NCBI RefSeq assembly: GCF_037042905.1
Contig: NC_087247.1
Location: 25,978,001 to 26,042,000, forward strand
Direction: 5' to 3'
DNA: 64,000 bases
Origin: Lytechinus pictus
Lineage: Eukaryota
The notes beneath the pieces are model-generated. The model was not told where the DNA came from. It ran no database searches and worked only from the letters and a program-made list of their open reading frames with translations. Below are positions 3,825 through 39,196 of the stretch, in pieces; within the stretch, counting starts at the first letter, position 1, and the number at the start of each line of letters is the position of its first letter. Made by a program: the position numbers and the translations under genes.

Positions 3825-5393
3825 TTAAGAAAATACTGCATTTCGGACGTACCCTGACACAGGATCGGTAACCAATATTTCGCAAACATTTTGGCGTTGT
3901 GGTTGTCTCATTGGAGGGTTGTCTTCTTTGGAAACCCTGCATGGAGACGATCCCGGTGGAATTTCTTTTGATATTGTTTCAGGGTTTATACTGCCACAAT
4001 GAATAGCAGACATCTCGCTTGCTTCCTCATGGGAGACATAATGGCCATTTTTAAAAACGCATCCTCCCTTCCTATGTTGGTCATTCGAGGAGTCTTCCTC
4101 AACATCTCTTGCCAGTATGATCTGTCTGTCTGCATCATCGGAAGGAACCTCAGACACAGACGAATTCGGAGAAGAAGCTACAGAGGTGCAAGGTGAAGAT
4201 GTTGTTGAGGAAGGACATGACGGGTTTGGTATTTTAATGCAGGTGGAACGGAGACGACTTACTTCACTGAGGATATCTACTGGAGATGTATCGAAGACGA
4301 GCACTGTTTTCATTCTTTCGTTTACAGTAGAATCTGATTCTGAGTAAAAGTCACTCGCATCGTAAGTTGACATGGCACTTGTTTGTTCTTGAACAGGTAA
4401 AAAGGTAATTTCGTCACCTCGCTGTGCACAACCATATTGGTCCTTTGAGACGTAGCCATAGTCAGTGTCGCTCTCCTCTTTGGTCGACATACACATATAT
4501 CCTGAAAAGATGTCACTTTCACTTCCAAAGCTCTTGTTAGATGATTTGGACTTCCTACGATACTGAGGTAAGTTGTAGGGAAAGTTGTCACCATTGGAAG
4601 ACCGATACCGTGATGACGCCATTGAACTGCATATGCTTTCGATTTCATCCAGACCAAAGTAATCTGTTCTATCTTTCAAGTCAACGTGTGCATGCAGCAT
4701 GTCCAGATTCGAAGGTATGAACTCTGTGAACATGGGGGAAGTCGTTTCCGTAGGACTGACCTGCCGGGAATCTGGATCACTGTCTGCACTCCCGAAACCC
4801 TGATCACTCGACGAGGTCAAGACAGTGGGAGTATCACTCTGACTAGATTGGAATCTAATCCTCTTAGTAGGTTGATCGTACACGTTTCCCTTTAAGATTA
4901 ACCTTGACACACCTACTGTACCAGGTTCAACATCGTTTGGATTTACATAACCATAGCTGTCTTCATCTTCCTCATCTGCTTCCTCAATGTCGTAATTCCC
5001 ATTATTGATCAATAACTGTTCCATACTTTCCTTTTCTGGAGTTATACCGCATTTAGCTGCTGGTGTTGCAACAGAATAACCTGTTTCCGGGTCTTTCATC
5101 AGAAGAACTTGTTTATTGCTTGTCAACTTCACCCTGCAACCCAAGGTAGACACATCGTGATAGTTGGAAGAATTGAACTGAGAAGATGAACACGATGATG
5201 TCCCACTCCCGCTGTTACTGCTACTGCTCTGCATGTCATAGAAACCGTGATCGACGCTGGAACCCCCGCTGTTGCTAACCATTGTTGGAGAGCGCTGAGG
5301 ATGGTCTTCGAGCAACGACTTGTCTTCCTTGAACTCATGAATTTCGTTAAAATATTCACTAGAGCAGGGCGGTCGAGGGGTCAGTGCTTCTTT
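3825..5393 (-). CDS. Cytokine receptor exon 10, long Ser/acidic/Tyr-rich cytoplasmic tail
   Basis: 1569-nt open frame after a ctgcAG acceptor, phase 0, ending TAA; contains YDMQ, YVNP and YMCM. Confidence 0.85.
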   Translation of the reverse strand, partial: KEALTPRPPCSSEYFNEIHEFKEDKSLLEDHPQRSPTMVSNSGGSSVDHGFYDMQSSSSNSGSGTSSCSSSQFNSSNYHDVSTLGCRVKLTSNKQVLLMKDPETGYSVATPAAKCGITPEKESMEQLLINNGNYDIEEADEEDEDSYGYVNPNDVEPGTVGVSRLILKGNVYDQPTKRIRFQSSQSDTPTVLTSSSDQGFGSADSDPDSRQVSPTETTSPMFTEFIPSNLDMLHAHVDLKDRTDYFGLDEIESICSSMASSRYRSSNGDNFPYNLPQYRRKSKSSNKSFGSESDIFSGYMCMSTKEESDTDYGYVSKDQYGCAQRGDEITFLPVQEQTSAMSTYDASDFYSESDSTVNERMKTVLVFDTSPVDILSEVSRLRSTCIKIPNPSCPSSTTSSPCTSVASSPNSSVSEVPSDDADRQIILARDVEEDSSNDQHRKGGCVFKNGHYVSHEEASEMSAIHCGSINPETISKEIPPGSSPCRVSKEDNPPMRQPQRQNVCEILVTDPVSGYVRNAVFS

Positions 5394-8300
5394 CTGCAGA
5401 TAATGAATCAAAACAAAGGAAAAACATTCAGGTGACGAACGGACAAAGGTTATTTTCGCCATTTATATTGATATGATGATGATAATAATGATGCTGATGA
5501 ACATGTTGGTGATAATGACGATTGCGATAGTGATGACGGTGATGATGGCAATAGTCTGATGAGAACAGTCTTTCCGTATTAGGTATATGTCATGTATCTT
5601 TATTATTAACTCATTTCACAACCATGCGAATAATTCAAGGCAAACTGGATAAGAGCTCATACCGTATTCATGAAATTAAGTAATTCATCATTGACAATAC
5701 TGAATTGTTTGTAAATTAGTACTTGAATCTATGTCCCATCCGCCTTAACCACATGGTTAAATCTTTATACACTCCATTCATCAGCTACGATTGCCCCCCC
5801 CCCTTCCGTCAAAGTCTTTCATTACGTTTTGGATATGGTCTCAAGCTTAGCCAATTGTTTGGATTATAATTCGAAAACTCACCTTCATGGCTAGGACTTC
5901 TGGTGGGATGTATGGTTGAGGTAGACGTGGATTTTTTTTGAACGGATTAATCCCAATATGCCAGCAACACAATCCAAGACCAATGATGAACATCACTTGG
6001 CAGAGAGTTATAGCTGACACGATCATAGCACCGGTCCGTCCTTTTCTTTTACTACCTGTATGAAAAATGGAGATGAGAAATATAGATGAATTCAAATGTG
6101 ATAATTTCTTTGATTCACCATGAGTAACCATTCCCATTTTGCGCGATGATTTGGACTATTTCTTCTCTCCAAGGCAAGAGTAAATTTCTTCAACTGGCAG
6201 CTTACCTATGACGTTTGGGATTTCTGCTCATAGTAAGTCGATATTTTATAGTCACGTTAACATTTCGCGGAATAAAAGATGTACTGATGTTCAATCACAA
6301 TAAGATTCAGAATAAAGATAACAGCCAAGTATAATGAAGTTAAACCCCTCATGTGCATCGTGTTTTGTGTGAAATTACACCGCAATCATACATGAATAAT
6401 CTAGACATATCGATTAATGCGAAAATGCATTTGCTATTTTCCTTATTGCAATGTCTATGGTGTTAACCAACAAAATATACTGCCTATTGAAGAGTGTCAC
6501 TCCTCATTATTTCCCTTTTGACTGTAAATCATGGTGGTTCCAGAAGTGTCCAATAGGCCGCGGTCATCATTTGGCGATGTAATTCTTATCGATTTATCAT
6601 TTTGTGATGATCATGTAGAGTTATACCCACATACTTAAGCCAGCTTCCCCGCCAAAACGCTTTGAAAAATTTAAATTCCTCACAGAATGGGTGGGTGAGG
6701 GTATGGGTTTGTGTCAGTTTAGCAAAAATAATTGTGTACCTGTTCTGTACTTACTTTCTGGAGCGATTGGTAGAGCAATCACTTCAGGTTCAGTCGTGGG
6801 TCCCTCCCCTCTCGTATTTACAGCGCTCACCCATACCAGGTAACTCTGCCCTGCTTCAGAGTTGATTAAGGTGTATTCTAATGGATTGTCTTCCTGCTCC
6901 TCTGTGGTGACAGTAATGTTTTCCACGATTGTTTCATCTGCCGTAGAAAGAATGCAAAATACATTGAAAAGACATGAGTATTATCATTGTTTATAATAAA
7001 AATGATGCTGACTTTCGTAAAATATTGCACAGAGCCAATATTTGCTTCTCATGGGCATTCACAATGCTTGTGCTACAAACTTCTGTTGGTGGCACCATTA
7101 TCTTATATTTTTTTAATCTGATTAAATTTTCAAATCAATTAGATTATCTATTTCTTAGATTCTTGAAGCTGTAAAAAAAAATCCGATATCTAACTTTGGT
7201 ATTCAGTACATACTACAAGTTATGTTTAAATTTGAAAGTGAAATCTAGCTTGCAAAATATAGTAAATAGTATAAAATCAATGAGAGAATTTACCTAAGCA
7301 GAGATGAGATGCCCATTCCTGAGAGTCTCTGCTACTCCTGACAGAATCCCCAACATAGGTATGTGGATATGAACCATTCAGTTCGCAGGAATAGATCATA
7401 TAACCGAATATGATGCCATTTTCTTCCATGGGGTCCACTGGAAACCACGTGACTGAGATCCAATTTGGATTTTCTGAAGATTCGTTCAAGGTGAGGTTTC
7501 GGGGTGCCGCTGATGGAGCTGCGAAAAATACCAAAAGATAATGATAATCATTATTATAATAATAATAATGATAGATCAAAAGATCCTTTCGTTTCCTTTG
7601 GAATAGATATGAGTAAAATCGATTGGATTTGTATCATGCTATTCAGCATGTTAGCACTTAGTATTTCCAACAGTTTCCCAATTATTTGATTTGCGCTTAC
7701 GATTTATATTCATTATCATTGTGCTCTGAATACTTACCTATTCTACTCCTAAAGAAAGTTGGAAAGGGTGCATGACTTGGACTCTAGATTTTGGTGGCGA
7801 ATGTCAGGGATGCGCCAAATTGATAAGCCTATCAAAAGGTCTCCTGGATTTTACAATGGATATCAGTTACCAGCCATTTATTTGATGAGTCAACCTCACA
7901 CACTATATATATATATATATATATATGCGATTTATATAACAATATAACAATGGACATGCCATTGAATTCAAGGGTTACCTGCAAATTTATGACAAAAATA
8001 TGAGATGTAAGTCCTCTATCTGAATGCCAAATCAGTTTCAAATTGCTAATGTTATAAGTGCTTTAAGACTACGACTATTCAGAACCAATTGCACCCTTTT
8101 ATCAGACATGAATTCTTAACATGTCGTCTATTTTGTGTTATTTTGCATGACTATCAAGAACCTCAGTTAAACAGATTGTTTGCTCCTTTGAAGTTTGTGA
8201 AGTAATAATAGAAACATCGGTTTCAGGAATCAGGAAACAGTGGATCGTGAAGTGTGAGGCACTATTTAAAGAGCTAACGGTATGATGCCGAAGCTTTCCT

Positions 8301-11300
8301 TTATCATCACTATACATGTATATCATTATACATGTAATACCTATGATTTATCTTGCTCTTCAAGACTGTATCGGCAACTCTAAATATCGACTAAACAGCA
8401 CCATTATTCCGACAAGATCAAAACACGTGTTAAAGTGTTATCCTTATTCTTTACCATTCTCTCCATTACAGCAGGGGTGTAATATATGTTTTTAAAACTA
8501 GGTGTTTAATTAAGTTCAAGATAATATTTATCTTTATTGTCATGATTATCAATATGGTGATAATTCTGACACAATTGAAGCATGTGTTCAATGATCAGTA
8601 TTTTGTTATCATTCTCTCCATTGCAACAGGGGTATAATATGGGCATAATTTACAATAGTAAGTTCGATGCGGTTCAACTTTTTATTTTATTTTTAATATC
8701 AACGTTTATAGTGGAGGTTTATGTTCATTCGGTCTACAAGCATTGGGATAAACCAATTGGGGAATTTGAACCAATTGTTGTTTGGTCTAAAATCCAATCG
8801 GTCTAAGTTGGCAATTTACAGAACTGTTTAATATTGAACATGTTGACGACGTCCATGTGCTGTTCTCTTATACCCTACTCTTCATTCCATCAGGGATATG
8901 ATCATTTCGGACAATATTGCTCAAAATCCATTTCACTTTAATTTTGTAATTGATTGCAACGATGCATGAACAATAAAGGAAATTTTGAAATATGTCTTGA
9001 ACTTTTATTTAAATTTCTCAGTTCTTTTATTTCCATATTATTTGTATCTTCCCGCAGTAATGCACCCATCTGAATTAGGTTCAGTCTAATTTTTGGTGAT
9101 TCTACAGAAAACTTTTAAACACGAGCTAAAGTTGTTATTCTCTTTCAGGTATTTGCATGATTTCAGGCGTGAAAACTTCATATTTCAGGCCTTTCTATGC
9201 TCCAGAGTACATAATGATCTGGTTTCTTTTCAGGCCCAGTGAGTAGAACTGACCCTGTGTTGGTATCAAGCTCTACCGAAAAGAACCCCCCCACTAAAAA
9301 ATGCTATTATACTCTTAAGAGACTAGGCAATATAGGCAGACAGTGGAGTGGCCACACGAAGCAGATTGTATTCAATGTATAGGAATTTAAGGTAAAGCAT
9401 TTTTGCGAGAACAAGAACTTCACTTAAACAAAAATGTTAGTTATATGATATAAGAATAAATATGTAACTATGCTAGGTGAAAGGGATCAAAACTTGTCCA
9501 TACCTGTTGCTAGAGTTCTTTCTGTAACATGTTTAGACCATGTTTTCATATCATTTTGGTTGAAGTAAGTCGATGATGATACCATTACTTCATATGTAGA
9601 GTAGGACCTTAAGTCGCAGAGTGTGTAGTGTTTAGAAAAAATATACTCTTCCTGGAAATCAAACATATGAAAATGCTTTGATGAATATATCATGACTGAA
9701 ATATAAATGCAGAGTGAACTCAAAATCAACTATACAGCACAGCCATAAAAAAACACTAATTACAAAAGGTGTGTTTCAATTCGACGCTTATTCATCTTCA
9801 CATTGATTTTAAAATGGGATTGAAATTTATTTTACGCTGCTTTGCCACCTAAAAGAGAGATAGGAAAAATGAAGTACAACAGTCAGTGTGCTGTGGTAGA
9901 AGGGAATACATTTTCTTCATTTAAACTGATTTTGATGACTTTTGATACCAGCAAAAGTTAGACGACCACTCTCTTATCTCTTCTCTCAATAATACTAGTA
10001 AGAGATATTGCCAAACACGGATCGTGTGGTCCAGTGGTTAGAGCATTGGACTCACTATCACAAGATTGTGAGTTCGAATCCCCACTCTGCCATTGTCACC
10101 ACTTTGATAAAAAGGCCCGAGAGTAATATCTGTCGTCTATAAGGTCATCCATTATGACTTATTAACCTAGACGTAAAAATGTTTCCGAGGTAATTGGTTA
10201 TATATACCAGCTTGACGTTTACCAGCAAAATGCTGTCCTGTCGAGTTCCTACGGGAGTTACGATAAACAGAAACAGAACAGAAGTTCTAAATCGGTCCTC
10301 CATAAACGCAGTTCACTTTTCCACATTTATGACTACACAAAAGACTGGCTTCATGCAAGAACTGAAGTTCAAAAAAAAAGTGAATCTATGCCTATATACA
10401 GTGGAGAGAACTGTTGCCATTTTTCTTCTTAATCGGTTTTCACAAGTCATGCACTTAGAATACAATAACATGAGAGCCATGATTTTTTTTGTTATCTTGT
10501 AGTAGTTTTCACAACCAAAATCATGTTTTTGAATGTTTAAAAATAACTCCGTACATTTACCTTTTTGTGAATGGTAAAACTTACCTCGGTCCACTGTGAA
10601 TCCAAGGTTGGATGATCCAGGTCTCGGTACCTGATTGAGTATGTCAAGGAAAGAGACCCGTTCATCCACCCAACAGGGTCCTGCCAGGACGCCGTTAAAC
10701 ATCCAGGCACGAGTGCAGTTACGCTGAGATCAGTAACAGGATTGGGACGAACTGTAAATGCAATTTGAATATGAAAATGTCTTACTATGGTTTTATTTTA
10801 ACACCTATTGCTTAGGAAAGGAAATTAAAGTTATTAATTTCAAGTTTCTTTTAGTATGTGGCCATAGTAAAATGAAGTAAGAATGAATGATATCTTAATT
10901 ATCCTATAGTGATAATGGCATATGTCAGTACCTACGTATCTCCATGCGCTGATAATTAAATGCTTTGTAGGATAAAAGTAATCATTGTTAAAAGGATGAG
11001 CATGATTTCTGGTTAAAGAAGTGACCATTATCTAGATTGAAAATGGTTTGTGTCCAAAAAGGCTGAGCATGATTTCTAAATTTAAGAAGTGATCATTATC
11101 TATAGATTGAAAATGGTTTGTGTCAAATGCAATCTACGTCCTTTCTGGTTAGCATGGTTAGGTTGAAACAATATAGCTTGAAACATTTGTCTTCTACGAT
11201 ACAAAGCTGTGTCGGTTTTAGTTAATATACGAACTACATTGAAAAGAATGGGGAAAATGAATGGATACATCCAAACCATTATTATGATTTTCTCAAAATA

Positions 11301-14300
11301 CTAGGAAAATGAACAATATGTTTTTAAATACTGAAAAGGTACCATGACGAACAATCATGTGGCCTATGAAAGGGCCCATCACATACCGTCATAGGTCCAT
11401 GATCACATATTGTCCGTGTACGAACAGTCAAACAAATCAATGTGAGTTAAATCCTCCTTTAATGTTTGTTGGGCAACTTACTAATTTCTTCGAAGTAAAA
11501 TGAAGACTGTTCGCTGAGAGACTTTCCCAGCACATTGGAAGAAACTACACGTATTTCAAATGTGTCATAACAGTCTTGACAGCTTGCTTCACATCTATTC
11601 TGTTCTGTAGGCCTATTCCTACACGTTCGCCAAGAATATCTGGATAACGAGAAATCACACTTTTGACTTGCAAATTCAAGTGTATAAAGTTTCGTCTTGA
11701 AGTACTCACATACTAATTTACCACTGGACACTTCTTCTATAATTACTTCATTTGAGTGAATTATTTCACCGAGTAAAACCAGCTCTGATATTTAGCTGAA
11801 ACTAGTAAAAAACTGCATGAGTCTGTTTCTGTTAGGTAACAGACTATTGACAAAATTTATGAAAATATCATTAAATTTGTCGCAAAATTAATTTTCCATC
11901 CATTTTGATTTCCCATACGTATTTATGATGACTGAAAACCCGATTTACTTCTCTTTAAACGCCAGGAAATACTTTTAGTCCCCATCGGTCTCTTCGGGTT
12001 GTTCTTAAACCGGTACGTACATACAGCTTTATCAAACACTTACAATTGTTAAAAATCAGCCAAAATATCTATAGAGGGTCTTTAATACGTTGGACGGATT
12101 TTTGAAAGTCAAACATGAGCGACTTCAGTGAAGGGGGGGGGGGGGGGGTGTTCCAACTTCTCTCTTTCTAAGAAAAGGGATAGTAAGAAATAAACTGACA
12201 AAATAAAATGAAATCATGTTGGACAGGTATTCGTTTGAAATTGAGATTGGATACAAATTACAATTTTAAAGCACAATACTGTATTGCCATATTTGACATC
12301 ACGCCACCATACAATTTGGGCTAACGGATTCGTTTTTCTGTAGTGGATGTATAAACTTCCAGTAGATACAGATATCGTTTCGCAATTTGTAAAATATGAG
12401 ATTTTGTTGCTACTTAAATGTAAGTATTTGATCCAAGGTTAGATATCTCATTTCGAAATGTCCTGCTGCAAATTGATAAGCTATCTCAAGATTTTTTTTT
12501 ATAAATTCGACCACACATGTCATCTCCCGGATATTTTTATTGTTGAAATACCTGCACATTGTGACAGTGTAATATGAACATATCATAACCCCAAAGTTTA
12601 AATCAACCTACTTTGAACTATTATCATAAATCGCCTTTATTATATATCACTCCTGCCACGAACATGCAATTGATAGTTAATGTTGGTTTATGGAAGCAAG
12701 TAATTCACTTTTAATGTAATATTAAGAGTAAGCTCAAGGAGGGATCTGGGTATACCATCAATCATTCCTAAAATGCAAGTTCATAAGTAAGTGATTAATC
12801 GATAAGTGAACTTGTTGTTAAGTATTAAGAAAATATACTTACTCGTTATATGGTTTGAATTCGAGTGTGTCTGTGACAGCTAGATTTGTAGTAGCATGGT
12901 GGCGATTGTCCCATGTGCACCAAAACGTTGTTAACGTTGGGGCCTCGCATGTTATATTGTCCACAGGTTGGGGTGGCGCTAGGTGAGGGGAAAAAGCAAA
13001 TAAGGTCATTTCTTGTTACTTGCACTATCGAAAAATCCCTATTCCAGTGATTCAAGCATTTATCCTATTAATATACGGCATGACATCATGGAGGGGTTGT
13101 TGTGCGTGTGTGTGTGTGTGTGTGTGTGAAGGAGGGTGTCTGCGTGTGTGTTATTATTCCATTGCACCATATAAAATGCTCTATAAATTGATTCAATCAA
13201 ATAATACATAACATGTTTAGATAAAATGTATCAGGTTGAGAGATCAAACTAGATTGAAATTAAAGGAGAAAAGACATACTAAGGAATTGAGCTATTTCGA
13301 ATATAAAATATCGATATTGCAAGATCCGAGGATTAACATGTACGGAACCATACCACACGGTCACAAAAAAAAGCCGAAGTTAAAAGTGATCGAAATAATT
13401 ATTTTGTGTATAATGATTAATTCTCAAAACTTAACTCTCAAAACAACGTTTAAATAACGTTTAAACAAACTTAATTCTTGAAATGTCTATATAGATGTAA
13501 GGGTCAGATATAAGAAACCGTTTTTTTTTGTCATGACCGATTATTTCACGACATTATTTGTTTTACCCAGCTTTAAAACATTAATGCAATAACTTTAAGT
13601 ACTTTTTTAATGTTGTTAAGGTGACCCGGCCTAGCAAACTGAAAAGATCGCAAAAAGACAGAGCTCATCAATAAGAAAATATAATAGTCTTAAAGAAATC
13701 GATATTCAATAAAATCACTGTGAATGTTGATTTGGCAAACCCTCTTAAATGAGCCTTAAGTTAATCTAACATACTGACATAATGGAAATTAAACACCCGA
13801 AAGCTATAGGAGACAGAAATCCTGCCAAATGATATTTAATTGGAGGAACGTGACTACATATAATTACTACAAATTGTGACGTCTCTGTACAAAATTGAGT
13901 ACGTTTAAAGACTTCTCGGCTTATGTTATAAAGTTGTTTTTTTTTCTTTATATACTCTACCAGCACCCTGTCTGCAGTTTTGAATGTTCATGAATTTTAG
14001 AAGATAACTTGCTCGACAGCGATAGGGGTATTGTAGAGATAATTTTCCAGATTAAATTGATTGAATATGAAAGCTTCTATCATTATCCATCAGGGATCAT
14101 CTAAAACCAGATAATTCCTGCACCAATATAACCCTGCTGTGCGTGTTAACTATTAAAATAATATTTTTGACAACCAGTGTTCGACCAACATTTTTGACAA
14201 CCAATGTTCTATTATACTAAAAGTCAGGTCGGTGAACGGCATTTTAGGAGACGTATCCCCCCCCAAAAAAATAAATGAAAGGGCAAAGCTTTTCCTAATG

Positions 14301-17257
14301 AAGTGCGCTTCTTGCGTTTCGAAAATCTACGCAACATGCAGTGACAGATTATACATGTAGAGGAAGATATAGGCTACATAATTGAACAAAATTAACGTTC
14401 ATATCGCATTTTAAAACTTAGTTAAGCTTCAGCTTCTATATACTTTGCAGGATACCCGTAGAAACAACTTAATATGACGATACACAATCTGGTCATAAAC
14501 TTCATTCTTCATGTTGATTTGATGTAAAAAAGAAATATGTTACGTAATATTCATTATTGTACCGGTAGAGAAGGGTGCGAATAAACTTACAAAATCCCAA
14601 CCTTCCAAACATAAAAGTTGTTTTGCGGTAATTTATGGATTAAATTTTGATTGCTTTGTTATCATGAGATCATAAAACACCTTTCAAGGACTTGATAAAT
14701 AAAACATTTGGCAACCGAAAATGTTTGTTACTGTATCCAGCGGCCGTGGAACAGTTTTGAAGGTGTGGGATGCCGAAGTGGGGTCTTACCATGCAACCCC
14801 CAAGCCCCCACACACAATCAGATCGTAATTGTTTATGTTTTTGGACACGTTTATCGGAAAAAGTGGGGGCTGGATCTCTCGGCCTCCCTCCCCCCGTTTC
14901 AGCGGCCACTGGTATCGATATATTAATCTATATTTTGAGAGCAGCTATGAAAATGAACACATCTTTATATCGATTTGCTATATAAGTTGTACCATATTAC
15001 ACTTATTTCTCTCTATATAGTAACATAATTGATTTAGCCAGTTAAAGGGATGGTCCGGGCTGAAAGTGTTTATAGCTTAATAAATAGAGTATAATTCACT
15101 GAGCAAAACAACAAATAACAAAGTTATTAAATTTTAAAGTTTAGCAATATTTTGTGAAAACAGTCGTCATGAATATTCATTAGGTGGGCTGATGATGTCA
15201 CATCACCACTTGTTCTTTTGTATTTTATTATAGGAAATTAGGTTTATTTCCTCGAAGAACTAGAAAAATTGGATTGACAACTGATTTAGTGCATTAGATA
15301 TCTATTGCTGCAACTTATTTCATTATAAGGGATACATATTATTCACACAAGTATGAAATAATAAAAAAAATGTGATTTTATGTAATAACATAAGAAAACG
15401 GAAAGTGGGGATGTGACATCATCAGCCCACCTAATGAATATTCATGACGACTCTTTTCATAAAATATTGCTAAACTGTTAACTTCAATCACTTTATTATT
15501 TGTTATCCGATTTTGATGAAATTTTCGGCATTTTGCTCAGTGAATTCTACTCTATGTATTAAGATTTAAATATTTTCAGCCCGGATCATCCCTTTAAAGA
15601 CTTTTTTTTATCCAGTAACACAAAGTTTAATTCATCCGCTTTTGTCTGAATTGATTTATCAATACATCGGACATACAGAGATAACTTTGGTCAATTATTA
15701 TTTTCTTTACTATTTATCCTTTTATTTATTTATTTGTTTATTTACTCAATTATTTGTTCCTTTAATACATTTGTTTTTCTCATGGAGTAACGTCTTTCTT
15801 CCTGTTAAACTTCTGCAATGCTTTAGATAGTGATAAACATTACATTAAATAGAGTGTCTGCGTTTAAAACTCAGCATGGAGGAATGCATTTTGTGGTGGG
15901 GTTCACAAACAATTGAGCTCAACTGTATTATGTATATGTTGGAGAAGCAAGCATTCGTGCTGGACAGTGCAATATAAAAGTTAAAAATGAAATTTCATAA
16001 TTTCACAAAATGAAGAAAAAGGTGTAAGAGCAGAGAAACGAAAGCCAGATGACTAACAAAGAATGACATGATGATGGATTGGAAATATCAGATAACAAAT
16101 AAAGTGCATGAATAAAAACATAAATACATTTCGTAGTTAAATGCATATAAAAATTGAAAAATAACATATATTAGAAACCTTTTCCACAAAATGCAACGGC
16201 TAATTCGATATAGACCTTTTATATAGAGGGTACAATCCTTAATCACAATAAAAAAATTCAAACCCCAAAATAAATAATAAACAAACAATTTTTCAAGTTT
16301 ATATAGTATTTACATGCATCTACTTCAGTTTCGTTACAAAGTAGGTCTAACGTTAAAATGATTGTAGAGTATTTTAGAATAGATCTAATATTTTATCTTT
16401 TCTGATGGTCCGTTGAAAACACTCACTTTTTATTTCTTATTTCCACCCGTCTTTTTACTTTGTCATTTTTTACCAAATAAATTGGGTCATTAACTTACTT
16501 CCGATAAACACGTGGACGCCGGGCCTTCTCGACCGATCGTCATCATCTTTGAATTGGCAGTAGTATTTTCCTGCGTCTTCGATTGTGACATTATGCAAAT
16601 GAAGAAGTGACGTCGATGCATTGGGCGTGGTGTATTGAGATGCTGGGATAGGGGTGGAGCCTTTTCTCCATTGTATTGACTGTGATGATCTATTCTCGTT
16701 CTTTCCGTGATGAAGGGTGCAGGAGAGAGTAAGAGAACTTCCGACCTGGATTTCAGGGTCTATAGGATCGAGTGAAGCTAGAGGGACAAAGATAAACAAA
16801 AAAAAAGAAGAGAGAGAAAGAAAAATTGATGAGAACTCAGCATTACTTCGTTCAGTTGATCTGAAATTCAGGAGAGAGAGAGAGAGGGGGGGGGGGGGGA
16901 AGGAGGGTTGAAAGATGATGAGTTGGATGAAGGGTAGTTTAGAAACCAATATTGGTGTACGCTGCCATATTGTCGGACATTCTGTGGACTATAGAGTAGT
17001 TTGATCAATGACGTTTCCAAGGTATACTGGACGTTTATTGTAAACTTTTTTTTTTATTTATTTTTTTAAACCCTTCCACAGGGGTCCTTTATTGAAATCA
17101 CTGTAATACATATTTTTTGACAATACATGATTGAATGATTAACACAGTATATGACACACAAGTTGAATATGTACAATACAATATTCCATGAAATTGTCGT
17201 AACATTTGTATTAAAAAAAGCAAAATCAAAGTGCAAAGGAAAGAAAAAATCCATACA

Positions 17258-17309
<52 letters not shown>

Positions 17310-20300
17310 TTTAGAATGATATCTGAGAGACTTAATGTAATAAAGTAAAAGATGACCACCTTTTTATGAATTTCTTCTCTTTCAGATTTGTTATATATAT
17401 ATACTATACGATTGAAACATGTGAAAAGTATAAGATTTTCAGAACAAGAAATGAACCTTCTTATCCATGAAATTTTTAATGATTTGGAATGGATAAAAAT
17501 ATGAGTCATCCTAACACCACCCTCACTATACGGTTGACACATTTGTTTCCTACTTATTTTATCAGGTTTGCCTTCCCATATAAAGTCGTAAAAACATCGG
17601 TGAATATCATTCATAATTTCTAATTTTGGTTCTGGAAAAGATAAAAACAAGTAATTCAATTTCGGTATAAATATAGATTTAACAATGGTTACCCTCCCTA
17701 AGGGAGTCAAAGATCTTTTTCGCCATACCGCCATCTGACGTTTTATTTCTTTAAACTTTTCTTGATAATTGTAATCGACCATTTTTGATAGTTCAACTGA
17801 AAAGTCTATACCTAGGTACCTAAAATATCCTTCCGAAATCCAGTTCAGTTTGTACTCGTGTAAAATCTCTTTTTTGAAAGTTCTATTCTTCCCAATCCAT
17901 ATCACCTGGGTTTTAGTTATGTTAATTTTGAGGTTGGATATTTTTTCAAATTCATCAAGTGTATCAAGGGCACATTTTAAATCTTGTTCTGAACCATTGA
18001 GTGTCAAAAGGGTATCACCTGCATATTGTAACACTTTAAGTGTTTTCCCATTAATATGCATTCCCTCTAGTTTGTCTGAGTGTCGAATTAAAATACCAAG
18101 AATCTCACTGACTAACAAAAAAAGATAGGGAGATAAAGGATCTCCTTGACGACACCCTCTTCCTATATTAAACCTATTTGCACAATATCCGTTAACTAAC
18201 ACATTGTAAACTTCCTCTATTCATTTTATCTCTATGTATTTTCTTGTAAATCAAATTGATTGAAATAATGATACTGAAAGGAACAATATAATAAGACTGA
18301 GATAAGCCCTTTGACTTTCAGCCCTTACTTTTAGAGAGTGAATAGCTAGGTTTGATTATTGAATTAGAAAAAAAAACCCGCTTAGATGCTCCCTATATGT
18401 ATGCTCCCATGTATTCCTTTACATATATTTCAATATTTTTTCTATCCTAACTTTTTGAGGGGTTCACATTTTACAAGCTTTGCTTTTCAGTGGACCCCTC
18501 CATTCTTCTCATGATATATGATTATATTGATTTAATTATATTTAATTATATTGATTATATTGATTTAAATATATTTGAATCACTTATTGAATATGTATAT
18601 TATTTATTCAATGTTGAATTTTGTTCATGCTTTTATTTGAATTGAATTGATTTATCATGTAATTATTTGTATTATGTTGAAGAATGAAAATAAATTGAAT
18701 TGAATTGAATTGAATATATAGCTTCAGCCTCAATGTATATGATACTCCAAAAATTAGGTGAGGCATAATTCTCATTACCGGGTTCCTCGGAGAAGACCCA
18801 ATGCCATCGCGCAACCAAAGGACCGACCCTCCGACGCGTCGGCCCTCTGGTTGCTTATCGACAAGCATTTTGTACTTTCTAAGGGGCTTTCACATCGAAG
18901 GTTGCGTAGAGTTGCGTAGAGTTACGTAGAGTTGCGTAGAGACTACGCAACACTACGCCGCCATTTGTTTTGCATACGCTAGTCTACGCAAGTGGGTACG
19001 CGGGAGGAACGCAGACAATTAAACATGTTTAATTTCTTGGCAAACTGTTGGCGTAGAGCCAGAGAACGCAGGACATACGCAAGCCTACGCAACACTACGC
19101 AACTGTACGCCACTCCTACGCAACACTACGCCAAAATGCCCCGGTTTCTCAAAACGCCTTTTTTGGAATGGCGTAGTGTTGCGTATAGACCGAAGTAGAC
19201 TTGCGTAGACCTGGCGTACAGTTGCGTATAGTTGCTAATCATTGGTATACTCATGCTGGATCCTACTGTTTCTCATCAGGTTTTTGCTGATTGTGCATGC
19301 AGTCAGTCACGACAAAAGCTCTACCATAACCAAATCAGCAGTCCACTTAATTTGAATGCTTGATTGTTCTGTCCATATTAATGCAAGATGCCAAAAAATA
19401 AGACCAAGAGGGGCAAGAAATCTCCTGTTTCAAGTGACCAAGGTGGAGATTCCCCTGCACCACAATCTAAACATAGTGATGCCGCTCGCGACGAAAATCC
19501 AAAACAACAGAAGAAAAAGAGACAGGCAAAACAATCAAGGTACTAATGGATAATTCGTTTTTCCATTCCAATCATAAAGAAGCGAAAACGGAAATCAGCC
19601 CCGTGGTTCGGTTTTTGAAAACACAACGAGAAAAACGTGTTGTGATTTCGTTTTTGTAGATTAAAAACAGAAAATTGAAATTAGAAATATTTAGTGGGCT
19701 TTTTCTGATTTCTCATTCTAAATTTGTGGTTTTATATAGCAAATACAAAATCAGAACACGGTTTCAGCTCTGTGGTTCTGTTTGCAAAAAACGCAAAAAG
19801 CAAATCGCAACACGCTTTCTGCTCCGTGATTCTGTTTTCGGACAACCTCACCGCAAACATCAAACTTGATGTCGGCTCTCTGATTTCTGATTTACTTTTC
19901 GTTCATCAAGCTTTTATTTTATTTTATTTTCAGTTTGGGCGGAGGTCAGTGGCGTAATGAGACTAAAGTTTTCGGGGCAAGACACGACAAAAGGGCAAAA
20001 TGATTTCAAATTAAGTGAGTGATCGAGGGAAGCGAGCGAGCCAAAAATAGCTTTTTAATACATAAATCAATTTGTTATGATGGATTTTTTCATGATGTTT
20101 AAACCATATATCCAGTGGCGTACCGTGGGTCACGTCATGGGGGGGGGGGGGACCAGCAACATTTTTGAGTCACTAAGCGCGCTCAGTTGCCAGGTATATA
20201 CTGACCCAATAGAGACATTTTAAGGACAGTGCCATTAAACGGATATTATCTCACTGATCACATAACATGTGTTTATATTCAGACCTCAAAAGGGACATTA

Positions 20301-23300: not shown

Positions 23301-23425
23301 TCAAAAATCGGGGGTGAAAAGAAAACGAAGAAGCAAAGGAACTTACCAGATATACTTTCTCCACATTGTATTCGAAAAATGCACAGCACTGCCAGGAGTA
23401 AATGGCCGATTCCACAAGATGACAT
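3825..23425 (-). CDS. Class I (gp130/Domeless-like) cytokine receptor, 10 coding exons, ~1038 aa: complement(join(3825..5393,5883..6055,6755..6937,7294..7518,9504..9651,10585..10751,11482..11639,12843..12978,16499..16777,23347..23425))
   Basis: All introns GT-AG with consistent phases (1,1,2,1,0,1,1,1,0); 3117 nt open to TAA. Domain order: signal peptide, Ig-like, PPQPVDNITC-x9-CTW cytokine-receptor N-domain, FN3 ending TWS, extra FN3, hydrophobic TM, Pro-rich Box1, long Tyr-containing tail. Confidence 0.85.
5883..6055 (-). CDS. Cytokine receptor exon 9, transmembrane helix and Box1
   Basis: AMIVSAITLCQVMFIIGLGLCCW followed by KKNPRLPQPYIPP; GTGAGT donor. Confidence 0.85.
6755..6937 (-). CDS. 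Cytokine receptor exon 8, FN3 D4 C-half
   Basis: YTLINSEAGQSYLVWVSAVNTRGEGP FN3 motif; GTAAGT donor. Confidence 0.85.
7294..7518 (-). CDS. Cytokine receptor exon 7, FN3 D4 N-half plus insert
   Basis: APSAAPRNLT...ISVTWFPVDPMEENGIIFGYMI FN3 motif. Confidence 0.85.
9504..9651 (-). CDS. Cytokine receptor exon 6, second half of D3 (WSXWS position reads MKTWS)
   Basis: YTLCDLRSYSTYEVMV...MKTWSKHVTERT FN3 pattern; phases 0/1 match neighbours. Confidence 0.85.
10019..10283 (+). mobile_element. tRNA-derived SINE
   Basis: A box TGGTCCAGTGG, B box GTTCGAATCC, non-tRNA body, (AAACAG)n tail. Confidence 0.8.
10585..10751 (-). CDS. Cytokine receptor exon 5, first half of FN3 D3
   Basis: IRPNPVTDLSV...LTASWQDPVGW...YSIRYR...WTE; tttacAG acceptor, GTAAGT donor. 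Confidence 0.85.
11482..11639 (-). CDS. Cytokine receptor exon 4, second half of D2
   Basis: YSWRTC...NRC...FEIRVVSSNVLGKSLSE; canonical splice sites. Confidence 0.85.
12843..12978 (-). CDS. Cytokine receptor exon 3, first half of cytokine-binding domain D2
   Basis: Spliced frame TPPQPVDNITCEAPTLTTFWCTWDNR (C-x9-C-x-W signature); this is a different frame from the ORF track. Confidence 0.85.
14738..14911. mobile_element. Short CAG..CTG MITE with 5-bp TSD
   Basis: CAGCGGCCGTGGAAC / GTTTCAGCGGCCACTG; TSD GTATC; related to the 44324 element. Confidence 0.7.
15046..15593. mobile_element. TTAA-targeting (Kolobok-like) palindromic MITE, copy 1
   Basis: TTAA|AGGGATGGTCCGGGCTGAAA ... TTTCAGCCCGGATCATCCCT|TTAA; long internal inverted repeat. 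Confidence 0.85.
16499..16777 (-). CDS. Cytokine receptor exon 2, Ig-like domain
   Basis: VGSSLTLSC...IQW...LHLHNVTIEDAGKYYC Ig motif; polypyrimidine/AG acceptor and GTAAGT donor. Confidence 0.9.
17045..18205 (-). mobile_element. 5'-truncated non-LTR retrotransposon (L1/Tx1-like RT fragment) with poly(A) tail, in receptor intron 1
   Basis: GCRQGDPLSPYLF, LQYAGDT (YADD decayed), LKINITKT, FRYLGI, GRVTIVKS; T-run at 17046-17067. Confidence 0.85.
18290..18715 (+). mobile_element. LINE 3' end fragment with stem-loop and (TTGAA)n tail
   Basis: GAGGGGTTCAC...GTGGACCCCTC hairpin, AATAAA, TTGAA repeats. Confidence 0.55.
19948..21740. mobile_element. Long-TIR MITE (CAGTGGCGTAATGAG...) nested in the 18882 element
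   Basis: GAAGCGAGCGAGCCAAAAATAGC at ~20030 vs GCTATTTTTGGCTCGATCGCTTC at ~21630; right terminus decayed. Confidence 0.6.
20113..21587 (+). mobile_element. hAT-type non-autonomous element, copy 1
   Basis: TIR CAGTGGCGTA/TACGCCACTG; perfect 8-bp TSD CATATATC; internal GCGAGCGCGAAGCGCGAGCTG repeats. Confidence 0.9.
23347..23425 (-). CDS. Cytokine receptor coding exon 1 (signal peptide MSSCGIGHLLLAVLCIFRIQCGESIS)
   Basis: ATG at 23425, hydrophobic core, GTAAGT donor in phase 1 matching the Ig exon; an acceptor (ttttattcAG) at 23467-23468 suggests a further upstream UTR exon. Confidence 0.75.
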
Positions 23426-38248: not shown

Positions 38249-39122
38249 ACTTTTGTTAAGATTGCTTTTATTGTTACTTGACGAACTCTCTCAACTCAAA
38301 TTATAATTTGACTATTTTGGAACATTTATTTCAAACTTTTTTAAACATTTACTCGGTGAATAGAATTCATTTTCGTTAACAAAATGTCTTGGAAAAAATA
38401 TATAATTTTTAAAACAACATGATTAATGACAATATAAAATTTGTTATATCTGTACATCTTTTTTATTCTCATAAATCACGTTTTTTCAAAAATGTTTTTT
38501 TTTTATATTTCAAATACATGCTATTAAAGGAGAATCAACGTTTATTATTTCAAACATTTCATTGTCAAAGAAATTTTTGTTTAAAATAAATGTTGACATG
38601 ATCATTCATTTCTTCTTTGAAATGATTCATTCCACTAAATCAAGGAGGCAGCAACAGCGCCGTCACATCAATCATCATCCATTTGAACTTGTCAGACTTG
38701 TCAAATAAAGAAAATGAACAGTGAACTTTTGTTTGGATTGTTATTGTTACTTGATGAACTCTCTCAATTTAATTTACAACTGACCCATTTTGGAACATTT
38801 ATTTCAAACTTTATTCTAAACATTAACATGGTCAATAAAATTAATTATCGTTAATAAAATGTCTTTGAAAAATATATATCATGTTTAAAACAACATGATT
38901 AATGACAAAAGAAAATATGTTATATCTGTACATCTTTTTTATTCTCATAAATCACATTTTTTCAAACATGTTCTCCTTCATTATTTTATTTCAAACACAT
39001 ATTATTAAGGAGAGTTAACTTTTTAAATTTCAAACTACCTTTCGATGTAAAAGTAATGTATGTTTAAAATAACTGTTGACATGGTCATTCATTTCTACTT
39101 TGAAATGATTCATTCCACAAAA
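38174..39122 (+). repeat. Diverged ~470-480 bp tandem duplication of the MADF gene 3' end and 3'UTR inside the Harbinger element
   Basis: CAAGGAGGCAGCAACAGCGCC starts at 38174 and again at 38641, with colinear downstream sequence. Confidence 0.9.
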
Positions 39123-39196
39123 TCATGATCGAAGTTTACATGCCATTTTTATGGCAGAGTCTGTGCTGTATCCCAATTAGTGCGCCAAGTGGCAGT

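What the first reader, a model, noticed from the sequence alone, without database searches (positions are those of the whole stretch)
3825..23425. Invertebrate class I cytokine receptor with an intermediate ectodomain and an oversized signalling tail
Seen in sequence: ten phase-consistent exons encode SP-Ig-CHD(2xFN3)-one FN3-TM-Box1 plus a ~550-aa tail; the ORF track shows only fragments, some in the wrong frame. Established: gp130/LIFR/G-CSFR/Domeless have three membrane-proximal FN3 domains and IL-6Ra-type alpha chains have none, and helical-cytokine ligands are largely unidentified in non-chordate deuterostomes. Inference: this is a lineage-specific JAK/STAT receptor with a one-FN3 stalk and an unknown ligand, an entry point to an uncharacterised cytokine system.
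Basis: partly seen in the sequence, partly recalled or inferred. Interest (0 to 1): 0.75.

Follow-up and report, generated by a model that had tools for sequence, protein, structure and literature searches.

The report
Short-stalk sea urchin cytokine receptor gene
This is a real, transcribed sea urchin (Lytechinus pictus) gene for a relative of the vertebrate cytokine receptor gp130 with one stalk domain instead of three to five and a long tail of conserved signalling motifs; databases call it "uncharacterized", and it is a shortened variant of a known receptor kind, not a new kind.

Summary
Ten GT-AG, phase-consistent exons on the minus strand (23425..3825) translate exactly to NCBI "uncharacterized protein LOC129257543" of Lytechinus pictus (1038 aa). 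Transcript contigs join exons 5 to 10 at the predicted junctions, with no extra exon between 7518 and 9504.

The protein is signal peptide, gp130/LEPR-type Ig, cytokine-receptor homology module, one FN3 with a helical insert, TM, a proline-rich Box1-like motif and a 545-aa cytoplasmic region. A profile search of solved structures ranks CRLF1, gp130, IL-12Rb2, CNTFR and IL-11Ra about eight orders of magnitude ahead of Robo and contactin. The class I cysteine signature fits exactly. WSXWS is canonical in the Diadema orthologue (WSAWS) but degenerate here (MKTWS).

The tail keeps tyrosine motifs invariant across three urchin genera: YDMQ (a STAT-type YxxQ), YMxM and YVNP. A JAK and a STAT are present in the genome.

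It is not the only such receptor. A longer paralogue (Ig-CHD-5 FN3) lies on another chromosome and is collinear with a hemichordate receptor. This scan probably noted that gene before (s1-329195). The single FN3 here matches FN3 number 3 of the long form, so this looks like a shortened derivative.

JAK/STAT coupling, the ligand and the partner chain remain inferred.

The parts
23347..23425 (-). Exon 1: start codon and signal peptide (aa 1-26), donor GT, phase 1
   Evidence: Sequence and model. Identical to the N-terminus of P0001. Not covered by laid reads.
16499..16777 (-). Exon 2: the whole Ig domain (aa 27-119), gp130/LEPR type
   Evidence: Pfam on the exon alone: Ig_2 3.4e-11; Lep_receptor_Ig 33.7 bits against a cut-off of 28.8. 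Aligns with gp130 D1.
12843..12978 (-). Exon 3: first half of CHD domain 1, holding C130-X9-C140-X-W142
   Evidence: Weak LIFR_D4 and EpoR_lig-bind hits. Cysteine signature. Phase 1 in, phase 2 out.
11482..11639 (-). Exon 4: second half of CHD domain 1, holding C171 and C185. The acceptor is at 11639, not 11666.
   Evidence: Translation equals P0001 only with 11639. The signature regex fits P0001 and fails my 1047-aa model. Orthologues lack the extra 9 aa.
10585..10751 (-). Exon 5: proline hinge (RPNPVTDLSV) and first half of CHD domain 2
   Evidence: fn3 weak hit. Junction 10585|9651 is present in transcript contigs.
9504..9651 (-). Exon 6: second half of CHD domain 2 with the degenerate WSXWS position (MKTWS)
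   Evidence: Aligns with WSDWS of gp130. Diadema orthologues have WSAWS. Junction 9504|7518 is in transcript contigs.
7294..7518 (-). Exon 7: first half of the single stalk FN3 (strands A-C) and the start of the Cys367-Cys396 bounded helical insert
   Evidence: Pfam fn3. AF2 model with pLDDT 78. Best match is FN3 number 3 of the long receptors.
6755..6937 (-). Exon 8: second half of the stalk FN3 (strands C'-G)
   Evidence: Pfam fn3 4e-4 on the exon alone. 47% identity over 34 aa with the paralogue's FN3 number 3. Junctions are in transcript contigs.
5883..6055 (-). Exon 9: basic juxtamembrane KRKGR, transmembrane helix (about aa 467-490), Box1-like NPRLPQPYIPPEV
   Evidence: Hydrophobicity peak. 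AF2 helix. PQPYIP is invariant in Lytechinus, Strongylocentrotus and Diadema. Junctions are in transcript contigs.
3825..5393 (-). Exon 10: 522-aa Ser/Asp/Glu-rich tail with conserved tyrosine motifs (Y568 YDMQ, Y622, Y665 YVNP, Y815 YMxM, Y828/Y830, Y968, Y1031), then the stop codon
   Evidence: No Pfam domain. 100% identical to P0001 residues 517-1038. Motif conservation. All of its sampled 31-letter words (share 1.00) are held in eight listed contig sets from two studies.
2618..3824 (-). Probable 3' UTR, at least about 1.2 kb. Inferred, not read.
   Evidence: Contig X1 record 1 has 2682 nt on the 3' side of window position 5300, of which 1475 are CDS. Contig X15 record 4 has 3822 nt there. 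This assumes the UTR has no intron.

Best explanation
The locus is an intact, transcribed, single-copy gene of Lytechinus pictus (NCBI LOC129257543). It encodes a type I membrane protein of the gp130/Domeless group of class I cytokine receptors. The layout is signal peptide, one gp130/LEPR-type Ig domain, a two-domain cytokine-receptor homology module, a single FN3 domain carrying a disulfide-closed helical insert, one TM helix, a Box1-like proline motif, and about 520 disordered residues studded with conserved tyrosine motifs.

It is most likely a shortened paralogue of a longer ambulacrarian receptor (Ig-CHD-5 FN3) that kept only FN3 number 3.

Inferred mechanism:
1. An unidentified helical cytokine binds the CHD elbow and the Ig domain.
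2. The chain dimerises, with itself or with the long paralogue.
3. The sea urchin JAK held on Box1 phosphorylates the tail.
4. The invariant YDMQ then docks STAT, while YMxM and YVNP could recruit PI3K p85 and Grb2.

Shown here: gene structure, transcription, domain architecture, family assignment, motif conservation, and the presence of JAK, STAT and a long paralogue. Inferred: ligand type, JAK binding, STAT, PI3K and Grb2 docking, partner choice, and the direction of domain loss.
For: Gene and RNA:
- The exon model equals P0001.
- Five junctions appear in two transcript contigs, with no extra exon.

Family:
- Pfam Lep_receptor_Ig and fn3 pass their cut-offs; LIFR_D4 reaches 22.8 bits, just under its cut-off of 25.
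- phmmer against PDB puts gp130 on top at 5e-15, collinear from D1 to D4.
- The profile search gives CRLF1 1.5e-22, gp130 5e-21, IL-12Rb2 5e-19, CNTFR and IL-11Ra before any adhesion protein.
- The best Foldseek hit of the whole-ectodomain model is gp130 (8dpt_A, 1.5e-15).
- Language-model neighbours are EBI3 and CRLF1 at 0.92.
- The signature C-X9-C-X-W-X28-C-X13-C fits the definition quoted in PMC1963337.
- WSAWS is present in the Diadema orthologues.
- The CHD is split into four exons with phases 1-2-1-0-1.

One FN3: Pfam; AF2 with pLDDT 78 and pTM 0.76; Foldseek hits to single FN3 domains with TM 0.7-0.8.

Tail: 10 of 21 tyrosines are invariant across Lytechinus, Strongylocentrotus and Diadema. 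These include the YxxQ, YMxM and YVNP motifs and the Box1 PQPYIP.

Pathway genes in the genome: a JAK exon (FERM_F1 53.7 bits; best PDB hit JAK2 at 4e-15) and STAT_alpha at 57 bits.

Paralogue and origin:
- A long receptor lies on C11.
- It is collinear with the hemichordate protein P0015.
- The short receptor's FN3 best matches FN3 number 3 of both long forms: 38.9 against 22.7 bits for the next in P0015, and both halves in C11.
Against: - No biochemical evidence exists for ligand, JAK or STAT binding.
- WSXWS is degenerate in this species (MKTWS) and in Strongylocentrotus (LKSWS).
- The whole-ectodomain AF2 model is poor (pLDDT 52). Generic Ig-FN3 proteins such as contactins and neogenin sit among its top Foldseek hits.
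- The excess conservation of tyrosines is not significant on its own (0.48 against 0.30 overall; Fisher p = 0.07).
- Short motifs such as YxxQ arise by chance in a 545-aa tail, although invariance across three urchin genera argues against that here.
- No tree with vertebrate and insect receptors could be built, so "derived from the long form by domain loss" rests on domain-by-domain similarity of 26-40 bits.
- Exons 1-4 lack read-level support.
Confidence: 0.7

Rival explanations
1. It is an obligate partner chain, not an autonomous receptor. It works only as a heteromer with the long paralogue. Either it is the second signalling chain, as the FN3-less IL-23R pairs with tall IL-12Rb1, or it tunes the long receptor, as Drosophila Latran does for Domeless.
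For: A long paralogue with Ig, CHD (WSDWT), five FN3, a canonical Box1 (SWPDPV) and a 725-aa tail exists in the same genome. Drosophila has such a long/short pair that forms heteromers (PMC2914635). Stalks of different length occur in vertebrate heteromers (my own knowledge).
Against: Unlike Latran, this chain keeps a Box1-like motif, an invariant YxxQ and a long conserved tail, so a purely non-signalling antagonist is unlikely. No evidence of co-expression or contact was obtained. The two tails share only short motifs.
Confidence: 0.25
2. It is an Ig-FN3 cell-adhesion or guidance molecule, or a receptor of another class, that merely resembles cytokine receptors because all are built from Ig and FN3 modules.
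For: Contactin-2, Robo2, DCC, neogenin and titin appear in the sequence and fold searches at 1e-12 to 1e-14. Word-indexed database searches return neogenin and L1 as the next hits. According to scan note s1-329195, public annotation labels a gp130-type receptor gene in this genome, probably the long paralogue, "sidekick-2-like".
Against: There is a single Ig domain, of the Lep_receptor_Ig type. The exact class I cysteine signature is present and WSAWS occurs in orthologues. The alignment with gp130 is collinear across D1-D4. The profile search favours cytokine receptors by about eight orders of magnitude. There is no phosphatase or other domain in the tail.
Confidence: 0.04
3. It is a decaying or mis-assembled gene model: a pseudogene or a chimera of unrelated exons.
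For: Exons 1-4 have no read-level support here. WSXWS is degenerate. The protein is only 66-68% identical to the Strongylocentrotus orthologue.
Against: The 3117-nt frame is open across ten exons. Transcript contigs of 4.7 and 5.1 kb come from two studies. Orthologues of the same architecture occur in three urchin genera, with invariant motifs in both ectodomain and tail.
Confidence: 0.02

Closest known systems
Vertebrate gp130 (IL6ST) and its close relatives (G-CSFR, IL-12Rb2, LEPR)
   Same: - N-terminal Ig of the Lep_receptor_Ig type, then a CHD with the four-cysteine signature and a proline hinge (RPNPVTDLSV here; KPNPPHNLSV in gp130).
- FN3 stalk, single TM, Box1-like motif and a YxxQ in the tail.
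- Best sequence and profile matches in the PDB.
- The CHD is split into four exons.
   Different: - One stalk FN3 instead of three (two in LEPR, from my own knowledge).
- That FN3 carries a 30-35 aa helical insert closed by two cysteines.
- WSXWS is reduced to xxxWS in this species.
- The tail is about twice as long as gp130's and cannot be aligned with it.
The long ambulacrarian receptors: the L. pictus paralogue on G000:C11 (about 18394332-18431225, minus strand) and Glandiceps talaboti LOC144436643 (P0015)
   Same: - Ig plus CHD align collinearly: 89.7 bits, E 1e-23, between the Diadema short receptor and P0015.
- They share the FN3 type with the Cys-bounded insert.
- All have long Ser-rich tails with GYV-type, YxxQ and YxxM motifs.
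   Different: - The long forms have five FN3 domains between CHD and TM, a canonical WSXWS-like motif (WSAWS, WSDWT) and, in the paralogue, a canonical WPxP Box1.
- The window gene has only FN3 number 3.
- The tails are otherwise unalignable.
Drosophila Domeless and its short paralogue Latran (eye transformer)
   Same: An invertebrate long/short pair of class I receptors produced by duplication. Domeless has a CBM, three FN3 and a YXXQ STAT site (PMC2914635).
   Different: - Latran has no FN3 and no YXXQ and acts as a non-signalling antagonist. The urchin short chain keeps one FN3, Box1 and an invariant YxxQ.
- The Dome and Latran genes lie in tandem, whereas the two urchin genes are on different chromosomes.
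- Dome's CHD is a single exon (PMC1963337). Here it is four exons, as in the Ciona gp130-like receptor and vertebrate class I receptors.
IL-23R (my own knowledge, not tested here)
   Same: A signalling chain with an N-terminal Ig and a CHD but a reduced stalk. It pairs with a tall partner and carries JAK and STAT docking sites.
   Different: IL-23R has no FN3 at all and a much shorter tail. No orthology is implied.

Membership tests
Class I (haematopoietin) cytokine receptors | Cysteine signature CX(9-10)CXWX(26-32)CX(10-15)C in the first CHD domain (definition quoted in PMC1963337) | tested here: met
   C130-X9-C140-X-W142-X28-C171-X13-C185 in P0001. It is also met in the Strongylocentrotus orthologues and in D. 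setosum. It fails in my alternative 1047-aa model.
Class I (haematopoietin) cytokine receptors | WSXWS motif at the end of the second CHD domain (stated to be variable, for example in GHR) | tested here: inconclusive
   L. pictus has MKTWS and S. purpuratus LKSWS, so only the second WS remains. The Diadema orthologues have canonical WSAWS at the same column. The position aligns with WSDWS of gp130.
Class I (haematopoietin) cytokine receptors | Two tandem FN3-like domains (the CHD) most similar to known cytokine-binding modules | tested here: met
   The profile of six urchin sequences against the PDB gives CRLF1 1.5e-22, gp130 5e-21, IL-12Rb2 5e-19, CNTFR 1.4e-18 and IL-11Ra 4e-17. The best non-cytokine-receptor hit is Robo2 at 3e-14.
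Class I (haematopoietin) cytokine receptors | Type I membrane topology: signal peptide, one TM helix | tested here: met
   There is a hydrophobic N-terminus. A single strong hydrophobic peak lies at residues 467-490, and nine N-X-S/T sequons all lie before it. AF2 predicts a helix over the TM.
Class I (haematopoietin) cytokine receptors | Box1 proline motif just inside the membrane that binds a JAK FERM domain | tested here: inconclusive
   The motif NPRLPQPYIPP starts about 10 residues after the TM, and PQPYIP is invariant in three genera. It is not the canonical WPxxP that the paralogue has. JAK binding itself was not tested. A JAK gene exists.
Class I (haematopoietin) cytokine receptors | Binds a four-helix-bundle cytokine | not testable with these tools
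   No ligand candidate sequence was available. Pfam IL6 and CNTF models find nothing in the genome, which is uninformative for short, fast-evolving, exon-split genes.
gp130/Domeless-type 'tall' receptors (Ig-CHD-FN3x3-TM-Box1) | N-terminal Ig domain of the gp130/LEPR type | tested here: met
   Pfam PF06328: 33.7 bits on the exon, 29.0 on the protein (cut-off 28.8) and 37.7 in the Diadema orthologue.
gp130/Domeless-type 'tall' receptors (Ig-CHD-FN3x3-TM-Box1) | Three membrane-proximal FN3 domains | tested here: not met
   There is exactly one FN3, at residues about 323-458. Transcripts hold no additional exon and the introns hold no relic FN3 exons. I therefore file it as a variant, not as a standard tall receptor.
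gp130/Domeless-type 'tall' receptors (Ig-CHD-FN3x3-TM-Box1) | YXXQ STAT-docking tyrosine in the tail | tested here: met
   A single YxxQ (Y568, FYDMQ) sits in an 18-residue block that is invariant in Lytechinus, Strongylocentrotus and D. antillarum; D. setosum differs at one position just after the motif. This is a motif only; docking was not tested.
Ig-FN3 adhesion/guidance molecules and receptor tyrosine phosphatases (contactin, neogenin/DCC, sidekick, LAR) | Several N-terminal Ig domains, a run of generic FN3 domains, and for RPTPs a cytoplasmic phosphatase domain | tested here: not met
   There is one Ig domain only. Two of the three FN3-like domains carry cytokine-receptor signatures. The 545-aa cytoplasmic part has no Pfam domain.
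Latran-type short non-signalling receptors | No FN3 stalk, short tail, no YXXQ (PMC2914635) | tested here: not met
   One FN3, a 545-aa tail and a conserved YxxQ.

The most novel reading that the evidence does not exclude
Echinoids run a two-chain helical-cytokine system that arose independently of the vertebrate one. The short chain in this window and the long five-FN3 paralogue would form a heteromer around an undiscovered sea urchin cytokine. The helical insert of the single FN3 would serve as a new contact or geometry-setting element, and the 545-aa tail would act as a multi-adaptor scaffold for STAT, PI3K and Grb2. This would give the genetically tractable L. pictus a complete, testable cytokine-JAK-STAT axis in a non-chordate deuterostome.
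Probability: 0.2. Interest if true: 0.7.

Novelty: new variant of a known kind. Interest (0 to 1): 0.45.

Why it matters
[quoted passage not shown] A 2026 survey lists one S. purpuratus "IL6R" in a tree, without an accession in the text I could read (PMC13203501).

This locus, together with the long paralogue, shows that sea urchins carry at least two gp130/Domeless-type receptors, plus a JAK and a STAT. One of the two has an architecture (Ig-CHD-1 FN3) that I did not find described. It also shows how such a form can arise, by keeping one particular FN3 of a five-FN3 ancestor.

All orthologues are labelled "uncharacterized", so the naming alone improves annotation. For function, the conserved YDMQ, YMxM, YVNP and Box1 motifs give precise mutational targets.

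L. pictus is a laboratory species with short generations and established CRISPR lines (my own knowledge). The receptor can therefore be used to look for the missing ligands, which current reviews say have not been identified outside vertebrates and insects (PMC12284397, PMC13203501).

Tried and rejected
1. My first splice model used the exon-4 acceptor at 11666 (1047 aa). I rejected it in favour of 11639 because only that reproduces P0001, fits the cysteine spacing and matches the orthologues.
2. AF2 of the whole ectodomain with a 6-sequence alignment gave pLDDT 52. Its Foldseek list mixes gp130, LEPR and IL-12Rb2 with contactins, neogenin and the insulin receptor, so I use it only as weak support.
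3. Three word-indexed protein searches returned only urchin orthologues, one hemichordate protein and generic Ig-FN3 proteins. No vertebrate or insect cytokine receptor sequence could be obtained by reference, so no phylogeny was built.
4. The exhaustive search with the tail exon found only four proteins, all from sea urchins or unnamed marine assemblies. The tail is not recognisable beyond them.
5. Genome searches with Pfam STAT_bind, IL6, CNTF and IL6Ra-bind gave nothing. The tool itself warns that this is uninformative for exon-split genes. STAT was found with STAT_alpha instead.
6. Genome searches with the hemichordate receptor were either swamped by generic FN3 or found only this gene's Ig exon. 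"At least two receptors" is therefore a lower bound.
7. The tails of the two paralogues are not significantly alike; they share only short motifs such as SGYVRN.
8. The test for excess tyrosine conservation was not significant (p = 0.07).
9. Complex prediction was not used. Only one JAK exon (F1 and a truncated F2 lobe) was available by reference, and a truncated FERM domain would not give an interpretable result.
10. No paper mentions LOC129257543, LOC115919021 or LOC100891084.

Full report
**1. What is in the sequence**

Stop-to-stop frames on the minus strand of 3.8-23.5 kb showed a series of open pieces with Ig, FN3, TM and tail-like content. Reading their borders gave ten exons, each with an AG acceptor and a GT donor (mostly GTAAGT) and consistent phases. 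An exhaustive protein search with the last exon returned a 1038-aa protein, P0001, identical over the tail. A word-indexed search named it NCBI "uncharacterized protein LOC129257543 [Lytechinus pictus]".

My first model was 9 aa longer because I chose an exon-4 acceptor at 11666. With the acceptor at 11639 the spliced CDS (3117 nt) equals P0001 exactly. That choice is the only one compatible with the orthologues and with the class I cysteine spacing.

The exons are:

| Exon | Window coordinates |
|---|---|
| 1 | 23425-23347 |
| 2 | 16777-16499 |
| 3 | 12978-12843 |
| 4 | 11639-11482 |
| 5 | 10751-10585 |
| 6 | 9651-9504 |
| 7 | 7518-7294 |
| 8 | 6937-6755 |
| 9 | 6055-5883 |
| 10 | 5393-3825 |

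**2. Transcription**

Eight contig sets of organism A from two studies hold every sampled 31-letter word of the tail exon (share 1.00). I laid two raw RNA runs and two contig sets on 5300-11299. One contig from each set (4695 and 5136 nt) joins 5393|5883, 6055|6755, 6937|7294, 7518|9504 and 9651|10585. These are exactly the model junctions of exons 5-10. Nothing lies between 7518 and 9504.

The few raw reads have the first mate on the + strand, as expected for a minus-strand RNA in a standard stranded library.

The 4695-nt contig extends 1023 nt beyond exon 5, where the model needs 652 nt to reach the ATG. It extends 2682 nt to the 3' side of position 5300. This is compatible with a full-length mRNA carrying UTRs. 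tblastn with FN3 domains of the long relatives found no relic FN3 exons in any intron.

**3. Domain architecture**

- *Ig domain.* Pfam on the protein gives Ig_2, Ig_3 and ig, plus Lep_receptor_Ig at 29.0 bits against a cut-off of 28.8. The exon alone scores 33.7 and the Diadema orthologue 37.7. LIFR_D4 reaches 22.8 bits, just under its cut-off. fn3 scores 44.6 bits in two stretches over residues 327-448. Nothing is found in the tail.
- *First CHD domain.* It carries C130-X9-C140-X-W142-X28-C171-X13-C185. This satisfies the class I definition CX(9-10)CXWX(26-32)CX(10-15)C quoted by Liongue and Ward (PMC1963337).
- *Second CHD domain.* The hinge reads RPNPVTDLSV, against KPNPPHNLSV in gp130. 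At the WSXWS position L. pictus has MKTWS, S. purpuratus LKSWS and Diadema canonical WSAWS.
- *Exon structure of the CHD.* It is built from four exons with intron phases 1-2-1-0-1. I recall this pattern as typical of vertebrate class I receptors but did not verify the phases. PMC1963337 states only that the multi-exon CHD structure is conserved from Ciona gp130-like to vertebrates, and that Dome's CHD is a single exon.
- *Stalk.* AF2 of residues 316-470 with seven sequences gave pLDDT 78 and pTM 0.76. The model has seven strands, with two short helices inserted between strands C and C'. The insert is flanked by the invariant Cys367 and Cys396. Foldseek matches single FN3 domains at target TM 0.7-0.8. 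So there is exactly one stalk FN3.
- *Membrane and cytoplasm.* A single hydrophobic peak lies at residues 467-490 and nine glycosylation sequons all lie before it. The cytoplasmic part has 545 residues, 16.5% of them Ser.

**4. Family assignment**

phmmer of residues 1-480 against all PDB chains puts gp130 first (5e-15). The alignment is collinear from the Ig domain through the CHD into D4. CRLF1, IL-6Ra and IL-12Rb2 are close behind, but contactin-2 also scores 1e-14.

A profile of six urchin sequences separates the classes:

| Hit | E-value |
|---|---|
| CRLF1 | 1.5e-22 |
| gp130 | 5e-21 |
| IL-12Rb2 | 5e-19 |
| CNTFR | 1.4e-18 |
| IL-11Ra | 4e-17 |
| IL-6Ra | 3e-13 |
| Robo2 | 3e-14 |
| contactin-2 | 8e-13 |

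The protein language-model neighbours are EBI3 and CRLF1 clusters at 0.92, with 190 or more shared features. The whole-ectodomain AF2 model was poor (pLDDT 52). Its best Foldseek hit is gp130 (8dpt_A, 1.5e-15), but generic FN3 arrays are interleaved.

Together with the cysteine signature, the single gp130-type Ig and the absence of any catalytic domain, this rejects the adhesion-molecule and phosphatase alternatives.

**5. Relatives and origin**

Orthologues of the same architecture are S. purpuratus LOC115919021 and LOC100891084 (66-68% identity) and "uncharacterized" proteins of Diadema antillarum and D. setosum (about 41%). No paper mentions these identifiers.

In the L. pictus genome the ectodomain matches only itself at E <= 1e-3. 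A scan with Pfam Lep_receptor_Ig found a second gene on another chromosome, at G000:C11:18431019. Reading 60 kb there shows, on the minus strand:

- an Ig domain (PF06328, 35.4 bits);
- a CHD with the motifs LTCFSHNSKDFQCEW and WSDWT;
- five FN3 domains;
- a TM helix and a canonical Box1 (SWPDPV);
- a 725-aa tail exon containing YPSQ and YMPM.

It is probably this gene, though I could not verify the identity.

A hemichordate protein, Glandiceps talaboti LOC144436643 (P0015, 1325 aa), has Ig, a CHD with WSAWS, five FN3, TM and a tail. It is collinear with the C11 gene exon by exon.

The single FN3 of the short receptor best matches FN3 number 3 of P0015, including the Cys-bounded insert: 38.9 bits at E 5e-8, against 22.7 bits for the next domain. 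It also best matches both halves of FN3 number 3 of the C11 gene, in all three urchin species tested.

The simplest reading is that the five-FN3 form is ancestral in Ambulacraria and the window gene is a duplicate that lost FN3 numbers 1, 2, 4 and 5. This is inference from modest scores. No rooted tree was possible.

**6. The tail and the pathway**

Aligning the Lytechinus, Strongylocentrotus and Diadema proteins, 30% of cytoplasmic positions are invariant. Tyr is the most conserved residue type, with 10 of 21 invariant, but the excess is not significant (Fisher p = 0.07).

The invariant blocks are:

- RxPQPYIPxxVLxMK, directly after the TM (Box1-like);
- SGGSSVDHGFYDMQSSS, holding the only YxxQ of the tail (D. 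setosum differs at the last position);
- GYSV;
- GY(V/I)NP, a YxN motif;
- SDQGFGSADSDxDSRQxSPT;
- GYMxM, a YxxM motif;
- DYGYV;
- GYVSH;
- a C-terminal GYVxNxVF(S/T).

From established motif specificities (my own knowledge):

- YxxQ is the STAT3-type docking site of gp130 and Dome. It is cited as the STAT site in PMC2914635.
- YMxM is the p85 PI3K SH2 motif.
- YxN is the Grb2 SH2 motif.

The genome encodes a JAK. A FERM_F1 exon scores 53.7 bits, and its ORF hits JAK2, JAK1 and TYK2 in the PDB with a best E-value of 4e-15. It also encodes a STAT (STAT_alpha, 57 bits). The components needed for the inferred mechanism therefore exist, but no interaction was tested.

**7. Comparison with what is known**

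The protein meets the class I definition (cysteine signature, CHD similarity, topology) and most gp130/Dome-group features (gp130-type Ig, Box1-like motif, YxxQ). It does not meet the three-FN3 stalk, and it only half-meets WSXWS in this species.

- It differs from Latran, which has no FN3 and no YXXQ and does not signal.
- It differs from alpha chains such as IL-6Ra and from IL-23R, which have no FN3 (my own knowledge).
- The tail length is not exceptional among its own relatives.

On the literature:

- A 2012 analysis said sea urchins lack an apparent cytokine-receptor system (PMC3296744).
- A 2026 survey includes one S. purpuratus "IL6R" in a tree without further description (PMC13203501).
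- I found nothing describing an Ig-CHD-1 FN3 receptor.

I therefore class this as a new variant of a known kind. It is a useful annotation and an evolutionary example, of moderate interest.

**8. Limits**

- There is no phylogeny with vertebrate or insect sequences.
- There is no read support for exons 1-4.
- No ligand candidate was tested.
- The receptor count in the genome is a lower bound.
- "Echinoid-specific" reflects what the capped searches returned.
- Every signalling step is inferred from motifs.

Noticed in passing
G000:C11:18394332-18431225 (loci L009, L011, L012, L015, L018, L019), minus strand: A long paralogue of the window gene. It has a Lep_receptor_Ig-type Ig split over two exons, a four-exon CHD (CxxxxxxxxxCxW; WSDWT), five FN3 domains, a TM helix, Box1 SWPDPV and a 725-aa tail exon with YPSQ and YMPM. 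It is collinear with the hemichordate protein P0015. It is probably the gene of scan note s1-329195, which NCBI annotates as sidekick-2-like.
   Followed up: partly
G000:C11:18424465-18428300 (L015): The intron between the Ig and CHD exons of the long paralogue holds about 4 kb of imperfect ACN-type microsatellite. It reads as poly-Thr with a periodic PSM in one frame, giving a 1330-codon open frame that is almost certainly not coding. A smaller copy lies at about 18434056-18434787.
   Followed up: no
window 10015-10283: Intron 5 holds a repeat of about 270 bp with very high depth in RNA reads and contigs on both strands (summed contig word depth of roughly 1,900-7,000 in the two 200-bp bins). 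It has many variant letters and loose ends, and a tRNA-like B-box-like stretch (GGTTGTGAGTTCAAATC). It is probably a SINE family.
   Followed up: no
window 17066-18202 (-): Intron 1 holds a 378-aa open frame with the C-terminal half of a reverse transcriptase (Pfam RVT_1, 7e-11). It runs into TA/TATA microsatellite. This is a truncated non-LTR retroelement on the same strand as the gene.
   Followed up: partly
window 36875-40498: An intact 433-aa DDE_Tnp_4 transposase ORF (Harbinger/PIF type, 8.7e-32) lies at 39197-40498 (-). Beside it is a 297-aa Gln/Pro-rich ORF at 37355-38248 (+) with no Pfam hit, in a GC-rich (50%) island. This may be a recently active two-gene Harbinger element.
   Followed up: partly
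P0002 (621 aa, ENA contig of 4.8 kb; a relative's tail exon): In another urchin-like assembly, the tail segment around SSPNSxVSExPSxxADRQxLIARDFEEEG is tandemly repeated five times. In the other orthologues it is single, so the tail evolves by repeat expansion.
   Followed up: no
P0003 / P0010 (Diadema antillarum) versus P0009 (D. setosum), CHD domain 1: The D. antillarum models carry a 17-aa insertion between the two cysteine pairs. It breaks the class I spacing rule and is absent from D. setosum. This may be an exon-extension artefact of annotation or an alternative splice form.
   Followed up: no
window 6030-6055 (aa 459-466): A basic stretch (SSKRKGRT) sits just outside the membrane, with SKRRGRT in Strongylocentrotus and PGRRSS in Diadema. 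It fits a minimal RxxR convertase motif and could be an ectodomain-shedding site. This is speculative.
   Followed up: no
G000:C8:15090740-15090928 (L008) and G000:C3:19813113-19813816 (L013, L014): There are JAK (FERM F1/F2 exon, best PDB hit JAK2) and STAT (STAT_alpha) exons. The STAT gene lies on the same chromosome as the receptor, about 6 Mb away.
   Followed up: partly
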